A stretch of 64,000 nucleotides of DNA from Lepidodermella squamata (Eukaryota; Animalia; Gastrotricha): positions 1,426,001 through 1,490,000 of the forward strand of contig JBLDXI010000015.1 in assembly GCA_047495785.1 (NCBI GenBank), read 5' to 3'. The position numbers and the translations under genes are program-made. The first letter of the stretch is position 1; each line of letters begins with the position of its first letter. A model generated the notes under the pieces. It worked only from the letters and a program-made list of their open reading frames with translations, ran no database searches and had not been told where the DNA came from. Below are positions 7,727 to 29,900 of this stretch, piece after piece.

Positions 7727-10700
7727 TTATTCGACAATTTCTTCCTCCGCCTCGACAACCTCCGTCTGCTGCGTGTCGGAGATGACGTGGCCATGCACCT
7801 GGCTCGGGTCCATGACCATTTGTTGCTGGTCGTCGTCGACAACGCCCTCCTGGCCGTCGCCAGTCGCGAATTCGATCTTATACATTTGCCCGTCGATTTC
7901 GATGTAGTCGCCGCTCGACAACGCCGCCAGTTGTTCCGGCGTCAGTTGGATCTGCGATGGCACAACACCGCCGTCGACGCCGCCCACTTCCATCTGAACA
8001 ATCGCCTCCTCCTCGACGCCATGCTCCATTTGCTGTTGTTGTTGCTGGAGTTGTTGGTCTTGCAGTTGTTGCTGCTGTTGTTGCGTGATGAGACCGCCCG
8101 AGCGGGTCGACGCCGATTCGAGGTGGTGCTCGACGACTTCCGACTGGGAGTCGGCGACGTGGTGGTGGTGCGCGGCGGCTTCGAGTTCGTGGACAGACGT
8201 CGTCGGCATGACTTGAACCTCGCCGGGGCCTTCCGAACCCGCGATGATAACGACTTCTTGCTGAGCAGCGGCTTCCGCGGCCTGAAAAAATCGAAAAATA
8301 TTGATTAAACATCAGATTCAAATAATAACGAAGAGAATTTCGGATCAAATTAAAACGGTGAATTGAAAAAATGTCAAATAATTTTCTATCAACGCATTAA
8401 AATAGGAAGAATCATTAAAAAATCGAAAAATCCAGTAATATTAAGGAGGATGTTTTGATTTTTTTCGAAAAATTATAAAAATGAAAGGTATCATGCGATC
8501 ACATGGAATTATAGCAATTTATGAAAATTTGGTTAAAGACGGGAAAAATTGATCAAAAATCTCAAAAACATCCTCCCATGTGAACCATTTGCCAAGAAAT
8601 TTCGACAAAATAAAATCGAATAAAAATTTCAACTTTTCCAATTCAAATTTTTGAACATCATTGCGATTGCGTTTTTTCAATAACGATTTTCGAATACTTG
8701 ATAGGCCATTCGAAATTATGAGCTCGAGTAAATTTTGAAAAATACAAGAAATTAAGAAAAATCGAAAACATACCCGCTGTTCCTTCTCCTTCTGCTGAGC
8801 AGCCTGAGCCGCCGGCGGGAGACGACCAGGCGGCGGTGGCGGGAGAGGCGGCAAATCGGCAGCGGACGCTTCCTGGAAGTAGCCGGTCGTGCCGTCCTGC
8901 TTCAACATGACCGAGATCTTGTGCTTCTTCCGCAGATGGTCGTAGAAGGTGAGTCGGAGTGAGCATGAAAACGGGCACAGCATGCACGAGAAGACATCAG
9001 CGCCCGACACGAGAAGGCCGCTTTCGACGGAATGCTTGCGCATGTGCGACAGCAACAGCTTCTTATTCTCGCAGATCGTGTCGCAAACAGGGCAAGCCTC
9101 CTGGTTCGGCAAATTCGCAGTCGCGGGCGGCGCGGCCTCGGGGTGTTGCAGCTTTACGTGCTTCCAGAGGGTGATGATTTTCTGGAAACGCGTCTGGCAA
9201 TGCCGGCAGGTAAATGTCCTCGCCTCAGGCGGGCCTCGACTCGCCTGCGCCAGCTCCTCCTCGAAAATCGTCTGCATGCGCTGCTGTTGCAGCTTCTTCT
9301 GCCGCTCCAACTCAACCTGCATCGGATTGTGGCGAGTTTTGATGTGGCGAATGATCATCTCCTTCTGACCAGCCCGGTAGTCGCACTGCGAGCACTGGAA
9401 CGGCCGCTCATTCGCGTGCGTCAACTCGTGGCGCCTCAGCCGCGACTCCGTATCAGTGACGAAAGAACACTGCTGGCAGAATAGCTTAACCTCAGGCCGG
9501 CCGCGTCGGTGAAACTTCTGATGCTGCTTCGCATCTCGCTTCGTGAACGTCTCCGCGCCGCAAACGTTACACTGCGCGTAGTCACCGCCGATTTTCCTCA
9601 ACTCGCACGCCAACGCGTCATCGCCGTGAGCCTGCCGCATGTGGATGAAGATATCCGGGTTGCGAACCGCGCAGATAAACCCGCAAACATCGCAAGGCAC
9701 GTTGTACTCGGGGTGGCGGTACAACTTGTGCCGGTTAAGATGGACGCGTTGCCGGAACACCATGCCGCACTCGTCGCAGTAGTGCCGCCGCAAATCATCG
9801 TGATTCTCCAAATGCTTCTGATAATCAGTCCACGCATCGGTTGTGTAGTTGCAATCAGCGCATGTGTAGTTCGAAACAATACCGCAATGTTGCTTCAAAT
9901 GAGAGTTGAACTCGTTTTTGATGTTAGTCACAAACTCGCACTGCTCGCATTCGAACATGATCGGCTCGTGCTCATCACGCTTGTGCTTCTTCAAATCTGA
10001 CTTGTTGTAAGTAACATAGTCACACTCATCGCACCTTCTCATCATCTTCGGCTCGTGCAACTCTTTGTGCTTCCTCAACTCTTGACGGAAAGGCGTTGAG
10101 AACGAACATTTTGTACATCTCAACCTGAAATCTGAGTTGTGAAGAGCGATGTGACGGCGAAGCGAGGCGGTAGAAACTGTTTGAAACTCGCACTGATCGC
10201 ATTGCAACAATTCTCGATTCGTGTGAACCTGGTGATGCTTCTTAAAGCCGTTCTTCGAATGGGTCTGGAAGTCGCATTTGTCGCACCGATATTTCGGTCC
10301 AAACATGTCGTGAGTGCGTAGATGGCGGATGAATTCCTTTTTGATCAACGATTGGAAGTTGCACATGTCGCAGTGGAAGATGGGCGCTTCTTCTTCTTCG
10401 TCCCAATAGTCGGCCGCAGTTCGACCACGTCGAGGGAACACGTCTTCTTGCTCGAGCTGCGGTGTCCACTCGTAGTCGTCAGGATCGAAAAACGGATGAC
10501 GCTTCTTCACAGGCGGTTTCTTTTTTTTAGCCGGGGCTGGTTTCTTGAAACTAGACTGCTGTTGCTGAGCTTCTTCCTCTTCTTCTTCACTCTCAGACAG
10601 CGGGATTTGAAACTCGCTAGGCACATGCGTCTTGAAGCCACCACCGATCAAGAAAGTCGGTAATTGATCGGGATCGTCAGTTGCCAGGATCGGAAAATCA

Positions 10701-11721
10701 CCCAGGTCTAACTTCTCCATACCAATGATAGGAATGCCAGAACCCATGTCGAAGGTGCCGTCAACGGACGAATAATTCATTGGTAGGTCAGTGCCGGGCA
10801 TGGTCACAACTTCAGCCGAGTAATCCGGTTCGGGCTCTGGTTCACTTTCGTGTTCTTCTTCCTCCTCGTCATCATCTTCATTACCTTCACCTTCCTCCTC
10901 AGGCTCAGGTTCGACGTTGCGAGTTCGCGGCCTGCCTCGTTGAGATGTGCTAGGCGCGGCTGGAGGCTGTGGAGGTAACGGTTCAGGTTCAGCAGCTGTG
11001 ACGACGATCTCTTCTGGTTCATCTTCATCACCCTCAACGACCATGACTAGACCGGACGGGTCAACAAGTGGCACGTGGGGTTCATCTTTCCGCTTTTTCT
11101 CCCGTTTACGAGCAGCAGCAGCTGCCCGTTTCTCCTTTTCAGCGAGTGTTTTCGCCTCCTTGAAAGCGCGCAGCGCTTGGATTTCAGGATCTTCGAAATC
11201 AGCTTCGAGCAGTTTCTTCGAAATGGTCCGCTTTCTTGGCTGGCGACCCTGAGTAACTGTTTCGTAAAAGTAGCCATGTCTACGGCCACTGCTAGGTCCT
11301 CCACCATGGATGAAGTCAACCGGTCCTCCTTCGTCAGTCTCAACAGTACTGACAAAGTACTCCTAGAAAATATGAAAAGTCAATATTATTTCAACTTGAG
11401 ATTCGTCTGCCAAAACTAAATCAAATGAATGGGAGTTGTCGAGTCATGGACCAAGGACAAGGTGCCCAGAACCCGGCTGATCTACCGGCAAGCAGCTGGG
11501 TAACCCAGGATTTTAATTTTGATCATATGACTAAAATCCTGATCACAAGAATTTTTTCCCAATTAAAATTTACAAGAAGACACATAAAACTACACTCTAA
11601 AAATTATTGGATGCATATTTTCAGACGGACAAGCCAGAAATGAGCCGCCGAATTCAAACTGGGTTGACCCATCACCCCGGGTGTTTGGCTGGTAGTTGTA
11701 GCAAGTGCTTACCTCGTCCAT
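7727..11721 (-). CDS. C2H2 zinc-finger transcription factor (15 fingers) with acidic N-terminus and Gln/Glu-rich C-terminus; exons 11721-11713, 11362-8774, 8281-7727
   Basis: Fifteen CxxC...HxxxH repeats counted in the 851-aa ORF. ATG GAC GAG|gtaagc microexon; ttttctag and tttttcag acceptors keep the frame. Confidence 0.9.
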
Positions 11722-12899
11722 TCGAGATTGAACAGCAGAGTAAAGTCGAGAGTCGATTGAAGAGGCGTTTACAGTGACGATATGATCAAGATTCAATTAA
11801 AAATGCGTCCAAAGTCTATGAATAATCGCTAAACTGATGAAAAAACGACGAGAGAACTTAGCGATAACAGCGAAGACGAGCCAAGTAACCGGGGAATAGC
11901 GGCCAGTGACCTTGAACACAAAGCTCTGGCTTCAGCTCGACAGAGATCGCGGTAAAAAATTTCTACGCGATATAAAGCTAACAAATCCGGCTAAATAGCA
12001 AGTTTGAAGTACAACAAAGTTCACTATGCGATATAAAACGTTGTGTGTCCTGATCGATAACAATAGAAATCAATCGAATCTTTTTTAGAGCGGGAGATTC
12101 GTTGCACGATCATTTTTATTTTTGACCGCAAATATGCAAGCAAATAAAAATAATAAAAGCAATAATATAAATTGAATAATCTAAATTTTACGATTTCATA
12201 AATTCAAATTTTCAAATTTTAGCGCGCGCAGCTTTTTGATTCCCCGACCGCCTTCTCGCTAGTGATTTCGCAGCATCCACGCATTATTGGCCTGAGAGCT
12301 GACTGTTCAATATATTTTACAGGTTTTGCGGAAGTTTATGAAAATCTTATCGAAAATATCCTTTGCCAAGGCCTTATAATAGACACCCAAACTAGGTCCA
12401 CTTTTGCCAATTTTCTTCCATGTCACCTTACACCTTCCACCTCGACTTCATTACAGTGGAACCCCGATTTCCCGTCACCTGCGGTATGTAAATATGTAAG
12501 AGCGACTTGGACCCACAGAGGGCAATTACATGCAAAACTACCGGGATTTCCCGTTATTCGGGAGTGCCTCCACGATCCATGATGAGTTTTCAATGCCTCA
12601 GACTCTAAAATAGTCGATAATATTATTGAATTAATGAGTTCAGATGTTTAAGGTGCAACGTCTTACAAAAATGTTTCACAGTCATCTCACATCTCACCAC
12701 ACTAGTTTCACAATGTGATTGTTCACATTTGGGTCATTTGGATAAATCTATTCAATAGGGTATGCTTTTTAGCTTAACTTCGACGTTTTTGTTGAAAAAT
12801 CAGAATCGAGCCATTCTGTTGGGTCAGCGATAACGGGCTGCGAATTTTGTTTGTGTCTTAGGTTTTTGCAATAAGCATATTTACTGCAAAATCATTTCC

Positions 12900-13592
12900 A
12901 TGATCATTCGTGTCGAAGGAAATGCGGACTTTCGTCGAGTCGAAGAGATTACCCGAGATGCATTTTGGAATTTGTATCGCCCTGGAGCAGATGAGCATTA
13001 TTTGGTTCATATACTGCGCAGCAGGCCTGAGTTTATACCCGAGCTCAGCCTTGTGGCAGTTGACGATGATGGTCAGATAATTGGCAGTATTCTCTACACC
13101 AGGACTGCTGTCAAGAGTGCAGATGGTAACTGCCACGAGACCATTACGTTCGGTCCTGTTTCAGTCTCACCGTCACATCAAAAGCACGGAGTTGGTTCCA
13201 AGCTTATCAAGGAGTCTTTGACCAAGGCCACCGCGATGGGTTTTAAAGCTGTTGTAATTATGGGCTACCCTGGTTATTACGAGCGCTTTGGTTTTGAAAA
13301 CGGTGAGAAGTTCGGTATCGCGTATTCTGATGGCAGTCATCCAATAGCTTTACAAGTATTGGAGCTGCAAAAGGGAGCTCTTACAGGCATTAACGGAAAT
13401 TATTATGAGAGCGAAGTTTTCAACACTGATGCGGAACAAGTGGCTGAGTTTGACAAGAATTTTCCGGAAAAGCGCAAATATGTTACCTACAGCCAAAAGG
13501 CATTTGATATAACAAGCTCACTGCAGAACGGCGACCCTGTGCCGCCAGAGCTGGCAAAATGGGCACACTGCTTAGACGAAGTAAACAAGTGA
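12900..13592 (+). CDS. GNAT N-acetyltransferase of bacterial YhbS-like type, intronless
   Basis: ITRDAFWNLYRPGADEHYLVHILR, FIPELSLVA, TFGPVSVSPSHQKHGVGSKLI (acetyl-CoA motif A) and GYPGYYERFGF. Confidence 0.9.
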   Translation: MIIRVEGNADFRRVEEITRDAFWNLYRPGADEHYLVHILRSRPEFIPELSLVAVDDDGQIIGSILYTRTAVKSADGNCHETITFGPVSVSPSHQKHGVGSKLIKESLTKATAMGFKAVVIMGYPGYYERFGFENGEKFGIAYSDGSHPIALQVLELQKGALTGINGNYYESEVFNTDAEQVAEFDKNFPEKRKYVTYSQKAFDITSSLQNGDPVPPELAKWAHCLDEVNK

Positions 13593-13842
13593 ATAAGCCA
13601 CAATCGTACTTTCTGAGCCCAAGGTTCGTTTTTTCGCAATGTCGACTTTAATTTAGTTAATCCAATGGTATATTTCATCTAGGTTCATGTTAATTGTTAC
13701 GCCGCTGTGATTTGTGATCGAAGAATTTCGAAGCGGATTCGGATGTTTTAAACGGTTATTGTGATATCATATTCTTTCAATGGACACCAATATATTCCTG
13801 TTATTCAGGAGTCACATTTTATTTTAAAGAAACTGTTTTGAT

Positions 13843-15389
13843 TCAGAAGAAAAAATGTTGAACAATATTTGGCGTACCGGGCTGATAACAATTGCCCAAT
13901 TTGTTTCTCAGATCATTTCTTTCGGAATAAAACGTTGATGTTGACGATCCTATCGTTTCTTTCCGTTCCCACAATTTCTCACACAGGTTTTGCAGACCGA
14001 TTTTGTGATTGCCGCCATCAGTTATCTTGTAACTTCGCTGCCAGGCGTAGTAAGGCGAGACAAGCTCAGACTGGCCAGTGTTGCTCGATAGAGTTTGGAG
14101 TAATTCTACGACAGAATCCGTGTTAGACAAAGAACTAGCGTCAATATAAGCACCGGGTGGAAGATAGTCGTTTAAATTTGAACTAGCACCATTGAACAGC
14201 ACCGGAATAACTCCGTAATTGAAATTCATCTAAATATAAGGAAAATAGACGGCTGCATAGAAACTAGAAGGACACCACTCACCGACATAGCTTTGAACGC
14301 TTCCTGTAGGTAATCATCGCAGTACGCATCCTCGAAGGCCATGTAGAACCGATAATCAGCAAGTTTCTCGAGCGCGATTGGCGTTTTATCTGTGGCGCCT
14401 TCACACGGGCCAAAAATATCAATTTCGACGCCCTTTTTGCGCAGCTTGTTGATCAAATTCTCCCGGCCACTTGGTGTTCTATTGCAAAAAATGGGAAAAT
14501 GATTAATTTTTTTTTACAAATATGCTTACAATTATTCCAATTTTTTTCTCTCAAAATTAATTGAGAAAAGAATGGTTAAAAATTTGATTTTTTTCATGAA
14601 TTGGGGATAGCCGATATTTTCAGGATTATTAAAACAAAAATCAACATGCTGGCTTGAATAAAAATTTTAAACTGAAACTTACACGCAATTCTCACCCGTG
14701 AACCACACACCCTTATTCGGCCGGCGGAAAAACGTGCTGATGAAAAATTCGATTTTCCTATTCATTTCCAAAATTTGATCACCCTGCTGTTGCGCGACGT
14801 TGCCGATCGGGTAGGCAACATCAGCCTTTGACGAATAGCCCATCGTTAAATTGAAATTCAACACATTCAACATTTCCCATCGATGCGCGTCCATGCCGCT
14901 GTGAACCGGCGAATCGAGGCTGAAATAGACCCATTGCTGCCAGTGGCACCGCTGGCCAGGCGTTTCTTCAAAATCGACGTCTCGCCCGTGAAAAATCAGC
15001 GCATCAGCACTGGCGTACGGCGCTCGGCTGACGGAGAAAATGCAATTTTTACCGCTGGCTGATTTTAAAATAGGCGACTTCAGGCCGTGAAAAATCGCCG
15101 ACCAATCAGCGTCGCCGTTGTAGGGTGTCCACATGACGACGAGAAGCGGGCGCGTACTATCTTGGCCATTGATGGGCGGCTGTAATTTTTCGCACGTTGT
15201 TATCGGCGCGGTGTAACGCGGCGCGGATTTGCGGCGAATCGACACGAACAGACCGAGGCAAATGCATGATACGAAAGTCCATGTGAATAGAGTGGCGAGA
15301 GTGTTTCGCCGGCGTTTGATACTGATTATCATGGTGAGGTTGTTGCTTATAGCTGCGAGATATTTCTGTCGAGTGTTGTGGTGTCGCAT
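13843..15389 (-). CDS. Alpha-1,3-fucosyltransferase-like (GT10) type II membrane protein; exons 15389-14683, 14478-14283, 14229-13843
   Basis: N-terminal TM segment, ADALIFHGRD, QQWVYFSLDSP, FNLTMGYSSKADV, YRFYMAFEDAYCDDY, VIPV, LPPGAYID and YYAWQ. GT-AG joins keep the frame. Confidence 0.85.
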
Positions 15390-26942: not shown

Positions 26943-29900
26943 TCATTCCCCAACCACCGCCTCGGGTTTCACGGTCAGGTTACGCTGTTCTGCCAGCATT
27001 TCTAGAGCGTCCAGAAACCCGTTCGGCATATGATCGGCTAGCATACGAGGGGACACAATGACATGGTCGTAGATGGACCGACAAGTTCGCACAATTTTCA
27101 GCTCGACATAGCCCTTTTCCTTCGAATTAGACGGCGCGTGCCACTGCCTAACAATGTGATAGATCGATCCGGGCAGTTGCAACGGCTGGTGGTGCACGCG
27201 GATCCCTAAACGGTGAGCTTTTTCGTGAGCACTAGTTTCTCTACTCAGCATTTCAGTTTCAGAATTCGCGCCAGCTTCTACCGTAATCCCGGCATCTAAC
27301 GGCTGATGCTCCTCGGCATCTGGCGACGCAGAATCCGGCGTTATCGAGTCGTCGAAGTTAATACACACAGAATTACGCATAGTTTTAATTGTTGAGAAGT
27401 CTATTTTGTTACTGGTATCACTTGAGTTATTTTTCACGGTAGACGCCGAACAACATGAAGCTGCGTTACCTATAACTGCCCATTTTGTTTGGTTGCATGA
27501 TCTCAGTACGTTAACAATATCAGTGCGTAGAGCTTCGATTTGGCGTAGGCCAATGCGCGGCACTACGTCTTTGCCTAGAATTACGCTGGTCACAAAGTTT
27601 TGCGTGTATCTCGCCGCCGAAACGCCTAAAAGGCCGCCTGGTGGCGAAAATGCGTAGACAAGTAAATCAGGGTGACTAGGTTTTAGTAGAATTCCGAGTA
27701 AACTGGCAACCCCTGCGCCGAGGGAGTGCCCTACAAAAACTAGGCCGAATTTCGAGGAAGTTCCGTACAACTCCTCAGCACGATCGAAGGCTCTCTCGAG
27801 TATTTTTTCATTCAGCAAACGATCACGTAACGCGATCGAAGCTGCCAGCATGCCTTTGTGAGCTACCCAAGAGTCGGAGGGCTCGTCAAACGCCTGTAAT
27901 ATCGGAATCTGAGCACTGTCTGCGTTCAAATCCGTTACAACGTCTGACAACGATAGAGTACCCCTTACTGAAACGACTACAGCTTTCAGCTTAGCATCGA
28001 GAAGTACTATGAAAGCAGTTTCGCCGATTCCGGACTCAAAATCTGCATATACTAGATCGGTTTCGGCAATCTCGGTCTGGCGAAAAACTGCCTGGGTGTT
28101 GAGTTTACACGGGTTATCATGCAAAATCTCGGCGTTCAACGTGGATTCAGACCTACGGCAACACCTGCACGACGACAACGGGCCTGTGATGGCGAAACCA
28201 GGGTGTTTCAACACGTAAAACGGCCAACCAGTTGCGGAATGGGCGAATTTGAAAACTCTCAATAATCTCAACACCAATTCAGAATCGGCTAGATTTCTCT
28301 CTGGGTGTAACATTGTTAAGGCGGGTAGGCGGTGATGCTCCTCCTCCGTATCTTCTTGGCTCTCCAGGGCAACAGGAATGCCGGAAAGCACTTTGATGCG
28401 ATGAGTCACGCTTTGTCGAATCACCCGTTTCTGCGCCCGTCTCAGCAAAATGAGACCAACTATTATGTCTGACATGACTAGATCAGCATCACCAAATAGT
28501 TCCCCGAAAATTTTGGCAACCTCAAGGAAAGTCGCTTGCTGTGTCCGGCGTTCAGAGCCAAGACAGCAGAATAATAGGTTAAATTGTTTGTACCACGTTT
28601 TTGTGTAGTCCTCTTTTGCCTGGCGCGCTTTAAGCAGGCGCCGTTTTGTATGTGAGATTTTTATGCGTTCCTGGTGTTGTTGGTCCGTTCCTGCTGATTG
28701 TTGTTGTTGCAATGGGGACATGTTCACAGTGGCAGCTGAGGCTGCTCCAACGGCTTTTTGAAGCCGATACCACTGACCACCTTGGTTCAATTATGATTTT
28801 GGATCTTCTGATGATAAGTTTAGTAATTTTACCTGAAAAGTCGTATGAACAGACAGCGATTAACGGTAAAAGAACAACCACGACATTTTCACAGATTGCG
28901 ATAGCTGAAATTCAAAGGATCGAGTTAAAACTGAGATAGGATTTGAAAGTAAAGACTCACCTAATAAAATTGTTGAAGTGGTCGAGTTTCGTACACATGG
29001 ACAACCGTACCACCAAACGTACGTGAAAGCAACATAGCAGATTTCAGCCGAAATGAAAACTGGAAGAAAAATTGCGAATTAAAATAGAGCATGCAAATTA
29101 GAGCATACTTCGATATTTAGAATAAGCTATCGAAAAACTCGGTTGAGAATAACTGAATTGCGAATTTTACTATAATTACGTTTTGAAAACATCGAAAGAC
29201 CAACCAATGATATACTTCTAGCTCAACACAACCGGATCCATTGCTATGACTTGAAAATGATAATAAGAGCCTTTTCACTACACTTTCCGACATTTAAAGA
29301 GCTCAGATCCGGTACAATGGTTCGACCCGATCTGCAAAGACTGGTACGATCGGTACAACTTCGCCCGCATGCTGAGCAATGACGAGAATAAGTCGATCGC
29401 ATAACTGATCGAATGCAACGCAGCGCCCAGATCGATCGCGGCGCACATGAGACGCGAAACTGGCAAGAAGGCGAGGCCGAAAACGGTTAGTAACATGCGA
29501 CAAGCTGTGAACAGAACACCCGACGAAGTGACTGTGACCCTCAAGCAGGTGCGCGACGATGTTGGCGTGGTTCCTCTTGACGCGCCGGATGGCAAAATCA
29601 ACTCGCTACTCGTTCCATGATTGATGACGTCAAGCGCTTCAAGCCTACCCCGATTTTACTCGACACCACATTCAAAACTAACGTCGAAAACTATAAGGTG
29701 AGTCTAATTTATATCAAAATTGGTTATTATTCGGCTTTTTGATTAAAGGTCATCAAAGTCGTTTATCGGTGCCCATAAACAGCCAGCAATCCCGTTGCTG
29801 CTTGCGGACGAACGGAAAGCGAATCTTCCAGTTGTGCTGGAAGAACTTAAGAAGATCTACCAGCCGGATTTCTTCTTTGTCGACAAGGATTTCGATCAGC

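What the first reader, a model, noticed from the sequence alone, without database searches (positions are those of the whole stretch)
12900..13592. Bacterial-type GNAT acetyltransferase embedded among spliced animal genes (HGT candidate)
Seen: an intronless ORF between an intron-containing zinc-finger gene and a fucosyltransferase, so it is not simply a contaminant contig. Established: the AFWNxYxPGxDEHYLVH...FIPEL...TFGP(I/V)SV...YYxRFGF...EFDKxFPxK signature is that of YhbS-like GNATs that I know from bacteria such as Firmicutes, not from animals. Inference: a horizontally acquired, intact enzyme, possibly for detoxification by acetylation.
Basis: partly seen in the sequence, partly recalled or inferred. 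Interest (0 to 1): 0.75.

Follow-up and report, generated by a model that had tools for sequence, protein, structure and literature searches.

The report
Foreign acetyltransferase gene in an animal
A small invertebrate genome (probably the gastrotrich Lepidodermella squamata) carries one intact, intronless acetyltransferase gene of ultimately bacterial type whose nearest relatives are mostly in single-celled eukaryotes, a fairly ordinary case of gene transfer into an animal.

Summary
Window 12900-13592 (+) is an uninterrupted 230-codon ORF for a YhbS-like GNAT N-acetyltransferase. It is single copy, on a contig longer than 1.4 Mb. A host dispersed repeat lies 340 bp upstream, and a fucosyltransferase gene with two GT-AG introns ends 250 bp downstream.

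No animal-named homologue appeared, and the wider family is bacterial. But the gene carries a conserved C-terminal tail of about 25 residues (L-x3-D-P-x-P ... C) that the 212-residue bacterial forms lack.

This tail defines a clade found mostly in microbial eukaryotes:
- three dinoflagellates;
- Aplanochytrium;
- the amoeba Flabellula;
- several metagenomic contigs with eukaryote-type neighbours;
- one member on a clearly bacterial contig.

The best identity to anything is only 54-57%. Position inside the clade is unresolved. Core sequence alone does not reject a Bacillota placement (AU p = 0.20). The donor could therefore be a protist or a tail-bearing bacterium.

All family-invariant residues and the acetyl-CoA loop are kept, so the enzyme is probably active. 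Its substrate is unknown, and "detoxification" is a guess. Expression and read-level support could not be tested.

Earlier notes of this scan report other transfer candidates in this same genome, but not this gene on other DNA.

The parts
12900..13592 (+). Complete intronless coding sequence (230 codons plus TGA) of a YhbS-like GNAT N-acetyltransferase
   Evidence: ORF list; Pfam PF13527, PF00583 and PF13508 above gathering scores; colinear with homologues from residue 1; AlphaFold2 mean pLDDT 94.4; Foldseek best match 4rs2 (E. coli YhbS), TM 0.85 normalised to the target.
13179..13196 (+). Codons 94-99 (Q-K-H-G-V-G): the acetyl-CoA pyrophosphate-binding loop, Q/R-x-x-G-x-G/A
   Evidence: G97 and G99 are invariant or nearly invariant in alignments A1 and A2. 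The meaning of the motif rests on established GNAT knowledge, not on a test here.
13506..13589 (+). Codons 203-230: C-terminal tail with the pattern L208-x3-D212-P-x-P ... C, which marks the tail-bearing clade
   Evidence: Aligned in A2. A profile built from the 17 other tails scores this tail 19.5 bits; shuffles reach at most 8.3 (0 of 2000). The tail is modelled with pLDDT 84-91. It is absent from the 212-aa bacterial forms.
12342..12561 (.). Two adjacent pieces of a short dispersed host repeat (about 90-115 bp), 340 bp upstream of the start codon
   Evidence: More than 40 matches of 71-94% identity on many other contigs of the same assembly. The rest of 11100-13900 is unique.
13843..15389 (-). 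Neighbouring GT10 fucosyltransferase gene, convergent with the GNAT. Exons are about 15389-14683, 14478-14283 and 14229-13843; the introns are 204 and 53 nt
   Evidence: Pfam Glyco_tran_10_N and Glyco_transf_10 hits on three ORF pieces that are contiguous in the profile. GT-AG boundaries were read from the sequence.
8519..11074 (-). Neighbouring C2H2 zinc-finger gene (main ORF), divergent from the GNAT
   Evidence: Pfam zf-H2C2_5 and zf-C2H2 hits.

Best explanation
The gene is a genuine, integrated, horizontally acquired acetyl-CoA-dependent N-acetyltransferase of the YhbS-like GNAT type. It belongs to a subfamily that arose from bacterial 212-residue forms, gained a C-terminal tail of about 25 residues, and now occurs mostly in microbial eukaryotes. 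The ancestor of this animal took it up either from a protist or from a tail-bearing bacterium. The gene has been kept as an intact single-copy gene. Shown here: the ORF, the fold, the conserved residues, the physical linkage to host genes and a host repeat, the shared tail, and the absence of named animal homologues among the listed hits. Inferred: that the gene is transcribed and the enzyme active, when the transfer happened, and who the donor was. The substrate is unknown. The best Pfam match is the Eis-type GNAT domain (Acetyltransf_9), which would suit small amines or protein lysines, but this is speculation.
For: The ORF is intact and colinear with homologues. All 27 invariant columns of A1, and the invariant and near-invariant columns of A2, are kept. 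The model is confident and closest to YhbS 4rs2 and to 4zbg. The window sits at 1.43-1.49 Mb of contig C15, the gene is single copy, and its flanks are unique apart from a host dispersed repeat 340 bp upstream. The spliced fucosyltransferase ends 250 bp downstream. The host is a protostome animal: its DAGL ORF hits arthropod, mollusc, brachiopod and nemertean DAGL-alpha at 29-36% identity. The tail is homologous to those of the clade. The clade including the window is recovered in three trees: SH-aLRT 98 without the tail columns (128 rows); UFboot 69 / SH-aLRT 98 (68 rows); SH-aLRT 70 on core columns only. Clade members named as eukaryotes are Flabellula baltica, Aplanochytrium minuta, Pyrodinium bahamense, Gymnodinium smaydae and Biecheleria cincta. 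Members on contigs with eukaryote-type content are L027 (CNOT10, Notchless, split WD40, kinases), L034 (Roc-COR, RCC1) and L032 (a 909 kb contig with very sparse calls). The clade is nearest to a bacterial clade containing Enterococcus, Oscillospiraceae and Synergistales.
Against: On core columns alone, the AU test does not reject placing the window with the Bacillota/Synergistota clade (delta lnL 12.4, p 0.20). The window's position inside the tail-bearing clade is a polytomy, and forcing it just outside the other 28 members is equally good. Codon usage has no power here: the GNAT lies at the 38th percentile of host slices, but random recoding scores almost the same. No transcript evidence was obtainable. 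This absence is uninformative, because a neighbouring host gene's own protein is not in the database either. The assembly comes from MDA-amplified DNA of a non-axenic culture (PMC11660948).
Confidence: 0.7

Rival explanations
1. Direct, fairly recent transfer from a Firmicutes-like bacterium carrying the ordinary 212-residue form. The tail would then be an independent read-through extension.
For: The best 212-aa metagenomic forms are as similar as the best tail-bearing forms: P0003 and P0004 at 54%, P0274 at 53%. The AU test on core columns does not reject a Bacillota/Synergistota placement (p 0.20).
Against: The tail is homologous to the clade's tails and not a chance extension (19.5 bits, 0 of 2000 shuffles). 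All three trees put the window in the tail-bearing clade. The named Bacillota relatives are only 42-46% identical. No bacterial ribosome-binding site or promoter is retained upstream, and terminator-like hairpins are not above chance.
Confidence: 0.1
2. Vertical inheritance: the tail-bearing GNAT is an old eukaryotic gene that was lost in nearly all animals and many other lineages.
For: The clade spans Alveolata, Stramenopiles, Amoebozoa and this animal. Aplanochytrium is sister to the dinoflagellates, as organismal phylogeny would predict.
Against: No named animal, fungal or plant homologue appears among the listed hits of two searches of a 5.8-billion-protein collection that includes nr, UniRef and EukProt. 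A bacterial-context member (P0002) nests inside the clade next to Flabellula. Vertical descent would require a very large number of losses.
Confidence: 0.1
3. Assembly artefact: DNA of a contaminating protist or bacterium was joined into a host contig by MDA chimerism.
For: The published L. squamata assembly matches this genome in size and contig number: 122 Mbp in 157 contigs, against 121.2 Mb in 151 contigs here. It was made from MDA-amplified DNA, and 370 non-metazoan contigs were removed from it (PMC11660948).
Against: This would need two precise junctions within 340 bp upstream and 250 bp downstream of a 693-bp gene, supported consistently at about 83x HiFi coverage. The authors detected no chimeric contigs in this assembly. 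The gene's GC (46%) sits within the host exon range of 42-53%. A host repeat and a host gene flank it closely.
Confidence: 0.05

Closest known systems
E. coli YhbS / HqbA (PDB 4rs2), COG3153-type GNAT
   Same: Same GNAT fold over about 175 residues (Foldseek E 6e-14, TM 0.85 on the target, 30% identity). Sequence E-value 1.4e-14. The acetyl-CoA loop and the YY-x-RFGF segment are shared.
   Different: Only 30% identical. The window protein has about 55 further C-terminal residues with no solved counterpart: a 30-residue part shared with the 212-aa forms, plus the 25-residue tail. E. coli YhbS/HqbA modulates RNA binding by Hfq independently of its acetyltransferase activity (PMC10710024, abstract seen). 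That role has no meaning in an animal, so the function cannot be transferred.
Uncharacterised 212-residue GNAT family N-acetyltransferases of Bacillota, Synergistota, Cloacimonadota and Spirochaetota (for example Enterococcus and Paraclostridium)
   Same: 42-54% identical over residues 1-205, with the same invariant residues including the D185-x-x-F188 and S-Q199 motifs.
   Different: They lack the C-terminal tail, and they fall outside the tail-bearing clade in all three trees.
Tail-bearing relatives in microbial eukaryotes (dinoflagellates, Aplanochytrium, Flabellula, environmental picoeukaryote contigs)
   Same: Same length class (226-242 aa), the same tail pattern, the same clade, and intronless wherever genomic DNA was seen.
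   Different: 35-54% identical. None is from an animal, and no synteny with the window was found. As far as my searches went, none is characterised.
Foreign genes in other microscopic animals (bdelloid rotifers, tardigrades, nematodes), known from the literature
   Same: An intronless foreign-type enzyme gene embedded among spliced host genes.
   Different: The host phylum differs. Neither the 25 papers holding both 'gastrotrich' and 'horizontal gene transfer' (15 of them listed by title) nor the L. squamata genome paper (0 uses of 'horizontal') treats gene transfer in gastrotrichs. The comparison with rotifers and the others rests on my own knowledge.

Membership tests
GNAT superfamily (Pfam clan Acetyltrans) | A profile match above the curated threshold | tested here: met
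   PF13527 41.6 bits (cut-off 25), PF00583 36.8 (20.7), PF13508 34.9 (27).
GNAT superfamily (Pfam clan Acetyltrans) | The GNAT alpha/beta fold | tested here: met
   AlphaFold2 pLDDT 94.4. All listed Foldseek matches are GNAT enzymes; the best is 4rs2.
GNAT superfamily (Pfam clan Acetyltrans) | Acetyl-CoA pyrophosphate-binding loop Q/R-x-x-G-x-G/A | tested here: met
   Q94-K-H-G97-V-G99; G97 and G99 are invariant or nearly invariant.
GNAT superfamily (Pfam clan Acetyltrans) | Acetyl transfer activity | not testable with these tools
   This needs an enzyme assay.
E. coli YhbS/HqbA orthologue group | Orthology with E. coli YhbS (similar length, close sequence, Hfq-related role) | tested here: not met
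   30% identity; the crystallised YhbS chain has about 180 residues against 230 here, which adds a C-terminal region. The animal host has no Hfq system (my own knowledge). The gene is YhbS-like in fold only.
Tail-bearing YhbS-like clade (defined in this report) | A homologous C-terminal tail, L-x3-D-P-x-P ... C | tested here: met
   19.5 bits against a profile of the 17 other tails; 0 of 2000 shuffles reach that score.
Tail-bearing YhbS-like clade (defined in this report) | Phylogenetic placement on core columns | tested here: inconclusive
   The clade is recovered with SH-aLRT 98, 69/98 and 70. The alternative placement with Bacillota is not rejected (p-AU 0.20).
Horizontally acquired gene in an animal | Physical linkage to bona fide host genes and host repeats | tested here: met
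Horizontally acquired gene in an animal | Nested among non-animal sequences, with no animal homologues | tested here: inconclusive
   No named hit is an animal. Most hits are unnamed, however, and several are short transcript-like contigs of unknown origin.
Horizontally acquired gene in an animal | Read-level support for the junctions | not testable with these tools
   No reads are available. The assembly paper reports no chimeric contigs.
Horizontally acquired gene in an animal | Transcription in the host | not testable with these tools
   The exact look-up found nothing. Host proteins of this genome are not in the collection anyway, as the control with DAGL showed.

The most novel reading that the evidence does not exclude
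The tail-bearing YhbS-like GNATs are an undescribed, eukaryote-adapted enzyme subfamily. It derives once from bacteria and has since moved between distant eukaryotes (alveolates, stramenopiles, amoebozoans). The gastrotrich copy would then be a protist-to-animal transfer, and one of the first transfers documented in the phylum Gastrotricha.
Probability: 0.35. Interest if true: 0.5.

Novelty: new member of a known kind. Interest (0 to 1): 0.35.

Why it matters
Foreign genes in microscopic animals are a known phenomenon, so one more acetyltransferase is of modest weight. Two points add some value. First, I could find no published treatment of gene transfer in gastrotrichs, and earlier notes of this scan list other candidates in the same genome, so a systematic survey may be worthwhile. 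Second, the nearest relatives form a tail-bearing clade that sits mainly in protists. This is a caution against calling a gene "bacterial" from family-level resemblance alone, and it points to an uncharacterised eukaryotic GNAT subfamily whose substrate could be found by ordinary biochemistry.

Tried and rejected
- **Codon usage and GC3 against nine host ORFs.** The test has no discriminating power, because this genome's codon bias is weak.
- **Exact look-up of the protein in public assemblies, as evidence of transcription.** Nothing was found. A control with the host DAGL ORF showed that this genome's own proteins are absent from the collection, so the blank means nothing.
- **Synteny between the window and the 14 contigs that carry clade members.** No tblastx match was found. 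Neighbours of P0124 and P0269 have no match in the host genome. None of those contigs therefore looks like a related animal.
- **Giant-virus vector.** One IMG/VR scan with the clade profile found no relative. This is a weak negative, because only one pattern was used.
- **Transposon carrier.** The gene and its immediate flanks are unique in the genome. Only a short dispersed repeat lies upstream.
- **Relics of bacterial promoters or terminators.** Counts were at chance level.
- **Run and sample accession numbers in the literature.** There were no hits, so the organisms behind P0001, P0010, P0019 and P0124 remain unknown.
- **ESM Atlas.** It returned only bacterial and archaeal GNAT clusters and added nothing.
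- **Forcing the window outside the other 28 clade members.** This was not rejected, and the constrained tree was in fact slightly better. The window is therefore near the base of the clade or unresolved within it.

Full report
**Observation**

Window 12900-13592 (+) is an uninterrupted ORF of 230 codons. It passes the Pfam gathering scores for three GNAT families: Acetyltransf_9 at 41.6 bits, Acetyltransf_1 at 36.8 and Acetyltransf_7 at 34.9. No NCBIfam equivalog reaches its cut-off. The nearest solved proteins by sequence are the Brucella GNAT 4zbg (E 1e-15) and E. coli YhbS 4rs2 (E 1.4e-14).

An AlphaFold2 model built on an 18-sequence alignment is confident, with mean pLDDT 94.4. Its best structural matches are 4rs2 (TM 0.85 on the target, 30% identity) and 4zbg. 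After those come Eis-type and N-terminal acetyltransferases. The last 55 or so residues have no solved counterpart.

The acetyl-CoA loop Q94-x-x-G97-x-G99 is present. So are all 27 invariant columns of alignment A1, and the invariant and near-invariant columns of A2. The start codon matches the N-termini of the homologues. The open frame runs 22 codons further upstream, but without any start codon.

**Genomic setting**

The window is G000:C15:1426001-1490000 in an assembly of 121.2 Mb and 151 contigs. The gene is single copy.

Upstream and divergent lies a C2H2 zinc-finger ORF at 8519-11074 (-). Downstream and convergent lies a GT10 fucosyltransferase. Reading the sequence shows two canonical introns in that gene: GTAAGT...AG at 14682-14479, and GTGAGT...AG at 14282-14230. 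Its stop codon lies 250 bp from the GNAT stop.

Searching 11100-13900 against the whole assembly shows that the GNAT and almost all of its flanks are unique. The exception is window 12342-12561, which holds two pieces of a short dispersed repeat. That repeat has more than 40 copies on many other contigs. The gene is therefore bracketed within a few hundred bases by host-specific sequence.

Further genes in the window are a Kunitz-domain gene, two lipase-3/DAGL-type ORFs, Vps34 and a GT15 mannosyltransferase.

**Host identity**

The DAGL ORF hits arthropod, mollusc, brachiopod and nemertean DAGL-alpha at 29-36% identity. One unnamed relative is 51% identical. The host is therefore a protostome animal.

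Earlier notes of this scan call it probably Lepidodermella squamata. I did not test that directly. The published L. squamata assembly (122 Mbp, 157 contigs, HiFi reads from MDA-amplified DNA, 370 non-metazoan contigs removed, no chimeric contigs detected) fits this genome in size and contig number (PMC11660948).

**Relatives**

A search of 5.8 billion proteins gave 428 hits. The best is 54% identical, and none of the named hits is an animal. Named hits are Clostridia, Spirochaetia, Fibrobacterota, Parcubacteria, a Methanosarcinaceae archaeon and one amoebozoan transcript.

Species-representative bacterial genomes gave relatives of 42-46% identity in Enterococcus, Cloacimonadota, Synergistales, Treponemataceae, Oscillospiraceae and Lachnospiraceae. 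An exhaustive HMMER pass over 1.84 billion cluster representatives found 272 proteins at E <= 1e-30.

**The C-terminal tail**

The key observation came from the alignments. Typical bacterial proteins of this family end at about residue 205-212. The window protein and a minority of hits continue for about 25 more residues, with a shared pattern: L208-x3-D212-P-x-P, then a Cys about 12 residues later.

A profile built from the 17 other tails scores the window's tail at 19.5 bits. The best of 2000 shuffles scores 8.3. The tail is therefore homologous and not a chance read-through.

**Who carries the tail**

Source names identify these members:
- Flabellula baltica (Amoebozoa);
- Aplanochytrium minuta (Labyrinthulomycetes);
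- the dinoflagellates Pyrodinium bahamense, Gymnodinium smaydae and Biecheleria cincta;
- further MMETSP transcripts.

Genomic context identifies more eukaryotic members:
- P0272 lies on a 28-kb marine contig with CNOT10, Notchless, intron-split WD40 genes, a PH-domain gene and kinases.
- P0279 lies next to Roc-COR and RCC1 genes.
- P0280 lies on a 909-kb contig with almost no prokaryote-style gene calls.
- P0269 and P0126 lie on AT-rich, gene-sparse contigs where the gene is richer in G+C than its flanks.

None of the members has a Shine-Dalgarno sequence at the usual spacing.

One member, P0002, lies on a 39-kb contig that looks bacterial. That contig carries a 566-residue multihaem cytochrome c, lipobox lipoproteins, an IS3 orfA/orfB transposase, a phage integrase and an HI1420-type gene.

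Several close relatives sit on contigs of about 1 kb that look like mRNAs of unknown organisms. These are P0001, P0010 and P0019.

**Phylogeny**

Three trees were built:
- A 128-row tree, in which the tail columns were dropped automatically, recovers a 19-row clade of the window plus tail-bearing sequences at SH-aLRT 98. This clade is sister (91) to a clade of Enterococcus, Oscillospiraceae and Synergistales.
- A careful 68-row tree recovers a 29-row clade at UFboot 69 / SH-aLRT 98. Inside it, a well-supported protist subclade (97/95) holds the dinoflagellates, Aplanochytrium and the Roc-COR-type contigs. The window lies outside that subclade in a basal polytomy with P0001/P0183, P0123/P0270, P0124, P0010/P0274, P0272/P0126 and (Flabellula,(P0002,P0136)).
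- On core columns only, the clade is recovered at SH-aLRT 70.

Two constrained tests were run. Forcing the window just outside the other 28 members is not worse. Forcing it into the Bacillota/Synergistota clade costs 12.4 log-likelihood units but is not rejected (p-AU 0.20).

The core sequence therefore prefers the tail-bearing clade without proving it. The tail supplies the independent character that settles membership. The immediate donor remains unresolved.

**Interpretation**

The family is ultimately bacterial. The window gene belongs to a derived, tail-bearing branch that lives mostly in microbial eukaryotes.

The most economical reading is horizontal acquisition by the animal lineage. 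The source would be a protist (food or associate) or a bacterium carrying the tail-bearing form. Acquisition was followed by retention: the terminal branch is long (0.46-0.64 changes per site), yet there is no stop or frameshift and no invariant residue has been lost.

Three alternatives are less likely:
- A direct Firmicutes origin with an independently evolved tail is contradicted by the tail's homology.
- Vertical descent from an ancient eukaryote needs very many losses, and it has a bacterial sequence nested inside the clade.
- An MDA chimera would need two exact junctions within 340 and 250 bp, supported consistently at high coverage.

**Function**

What can be said is that this is an acetyl-CoA-dependent N-acetyltransferase with a YhbS-like core. 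E. coli YhbS (HqbA) acts on the Hfq RNA-binding repertoire independently of its acetyltransferase activity (PMC10710024, abstract). That role cannot be carried over to an animal.

The best Pfam profile is the Eis-type GNAT domain. This fits small amines or lysines as acceptors, but it is a lead only.

**What could not be done**

- Transcription could not be tested. The exact look-up was blank, but the collection does not hold this genome's proteins.
- Read-level junction support could not be examined.
- dN/dS was not possible, because no orthologue in a related animal was found.
- The identities of the unnamed closest relatives are unknown.
- Codon usage is uninformative.

Noticed in passing
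window 12342-12436 and 12447-12561: A short dispersed repeat of about 90-115 bp with more than 40 copies of 71-94% identity across many contigs. In other copies an adjacent 34-40-bp piece matches in inverted orientation, which suggests a MITE-like element with terminal inverted repeats. The 106-aa ORF at 12262-12582 is probably just this repeat.
   Followed up: partly
window 13843-15389 (-): The GT10 fucosyltransferase has very short canonical introns (204 and 53 nt). An AATAAA lies about 20 nt after its stop codon. Its 3' end is only 250 bp from the GNAT stop, in convergent orientation.
   Followed up: partly
window 13614-13628 (+): A six-pair hairpin followed by a T-run lies 22 nt after the GNAT stop and resembles a bacterial intrinsic terminator. 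The region's count of such sites (2) is within the shuffle expectation (1.0 +/- 1.1), so it is not evidence of a relic.
   Followed up: yes
L002 7061-8761 (-) and 9005-11836 (+): The one bacterial-context contig that carries a tail-bearing GNAT also encodes a 566-residue protein packed with CxxCH haem-binding motifs. Beside the GNAT it encodes lipobox lipoproteins with eukaryote-like CAP and calcium-binding EGF domains.
   Followed up: no
L029 11367-13633 (+): On the contig that carries P0136, a DEAD-box helicase is split into adjacent calls. Two of them (12296-12664 and 12668-13633) are in the same frame and separated only by a stop codon and one further codon. This hints at a reassigned stop codon or an error in that unknown organism.
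   Followed up: no
proteins P0273 and P0133: P0273 (397 aa) is a tandem fusion of two YhbS-like GNAT domains. P0133 (265 aa) extends the tail with a hydrophobic, membrane-anchor-like C-terminus.
   Followed up: no
protein P0335: The host's DAGL ORF (window 26946-28790, -) has an unnamed relative of 51% identity on a 19-kb ENA contig, far closer than any named animal (29-36%). This may be the second, distantly related species that other notes of this scan mention. I could not fetch its contig.
   Followed up: no
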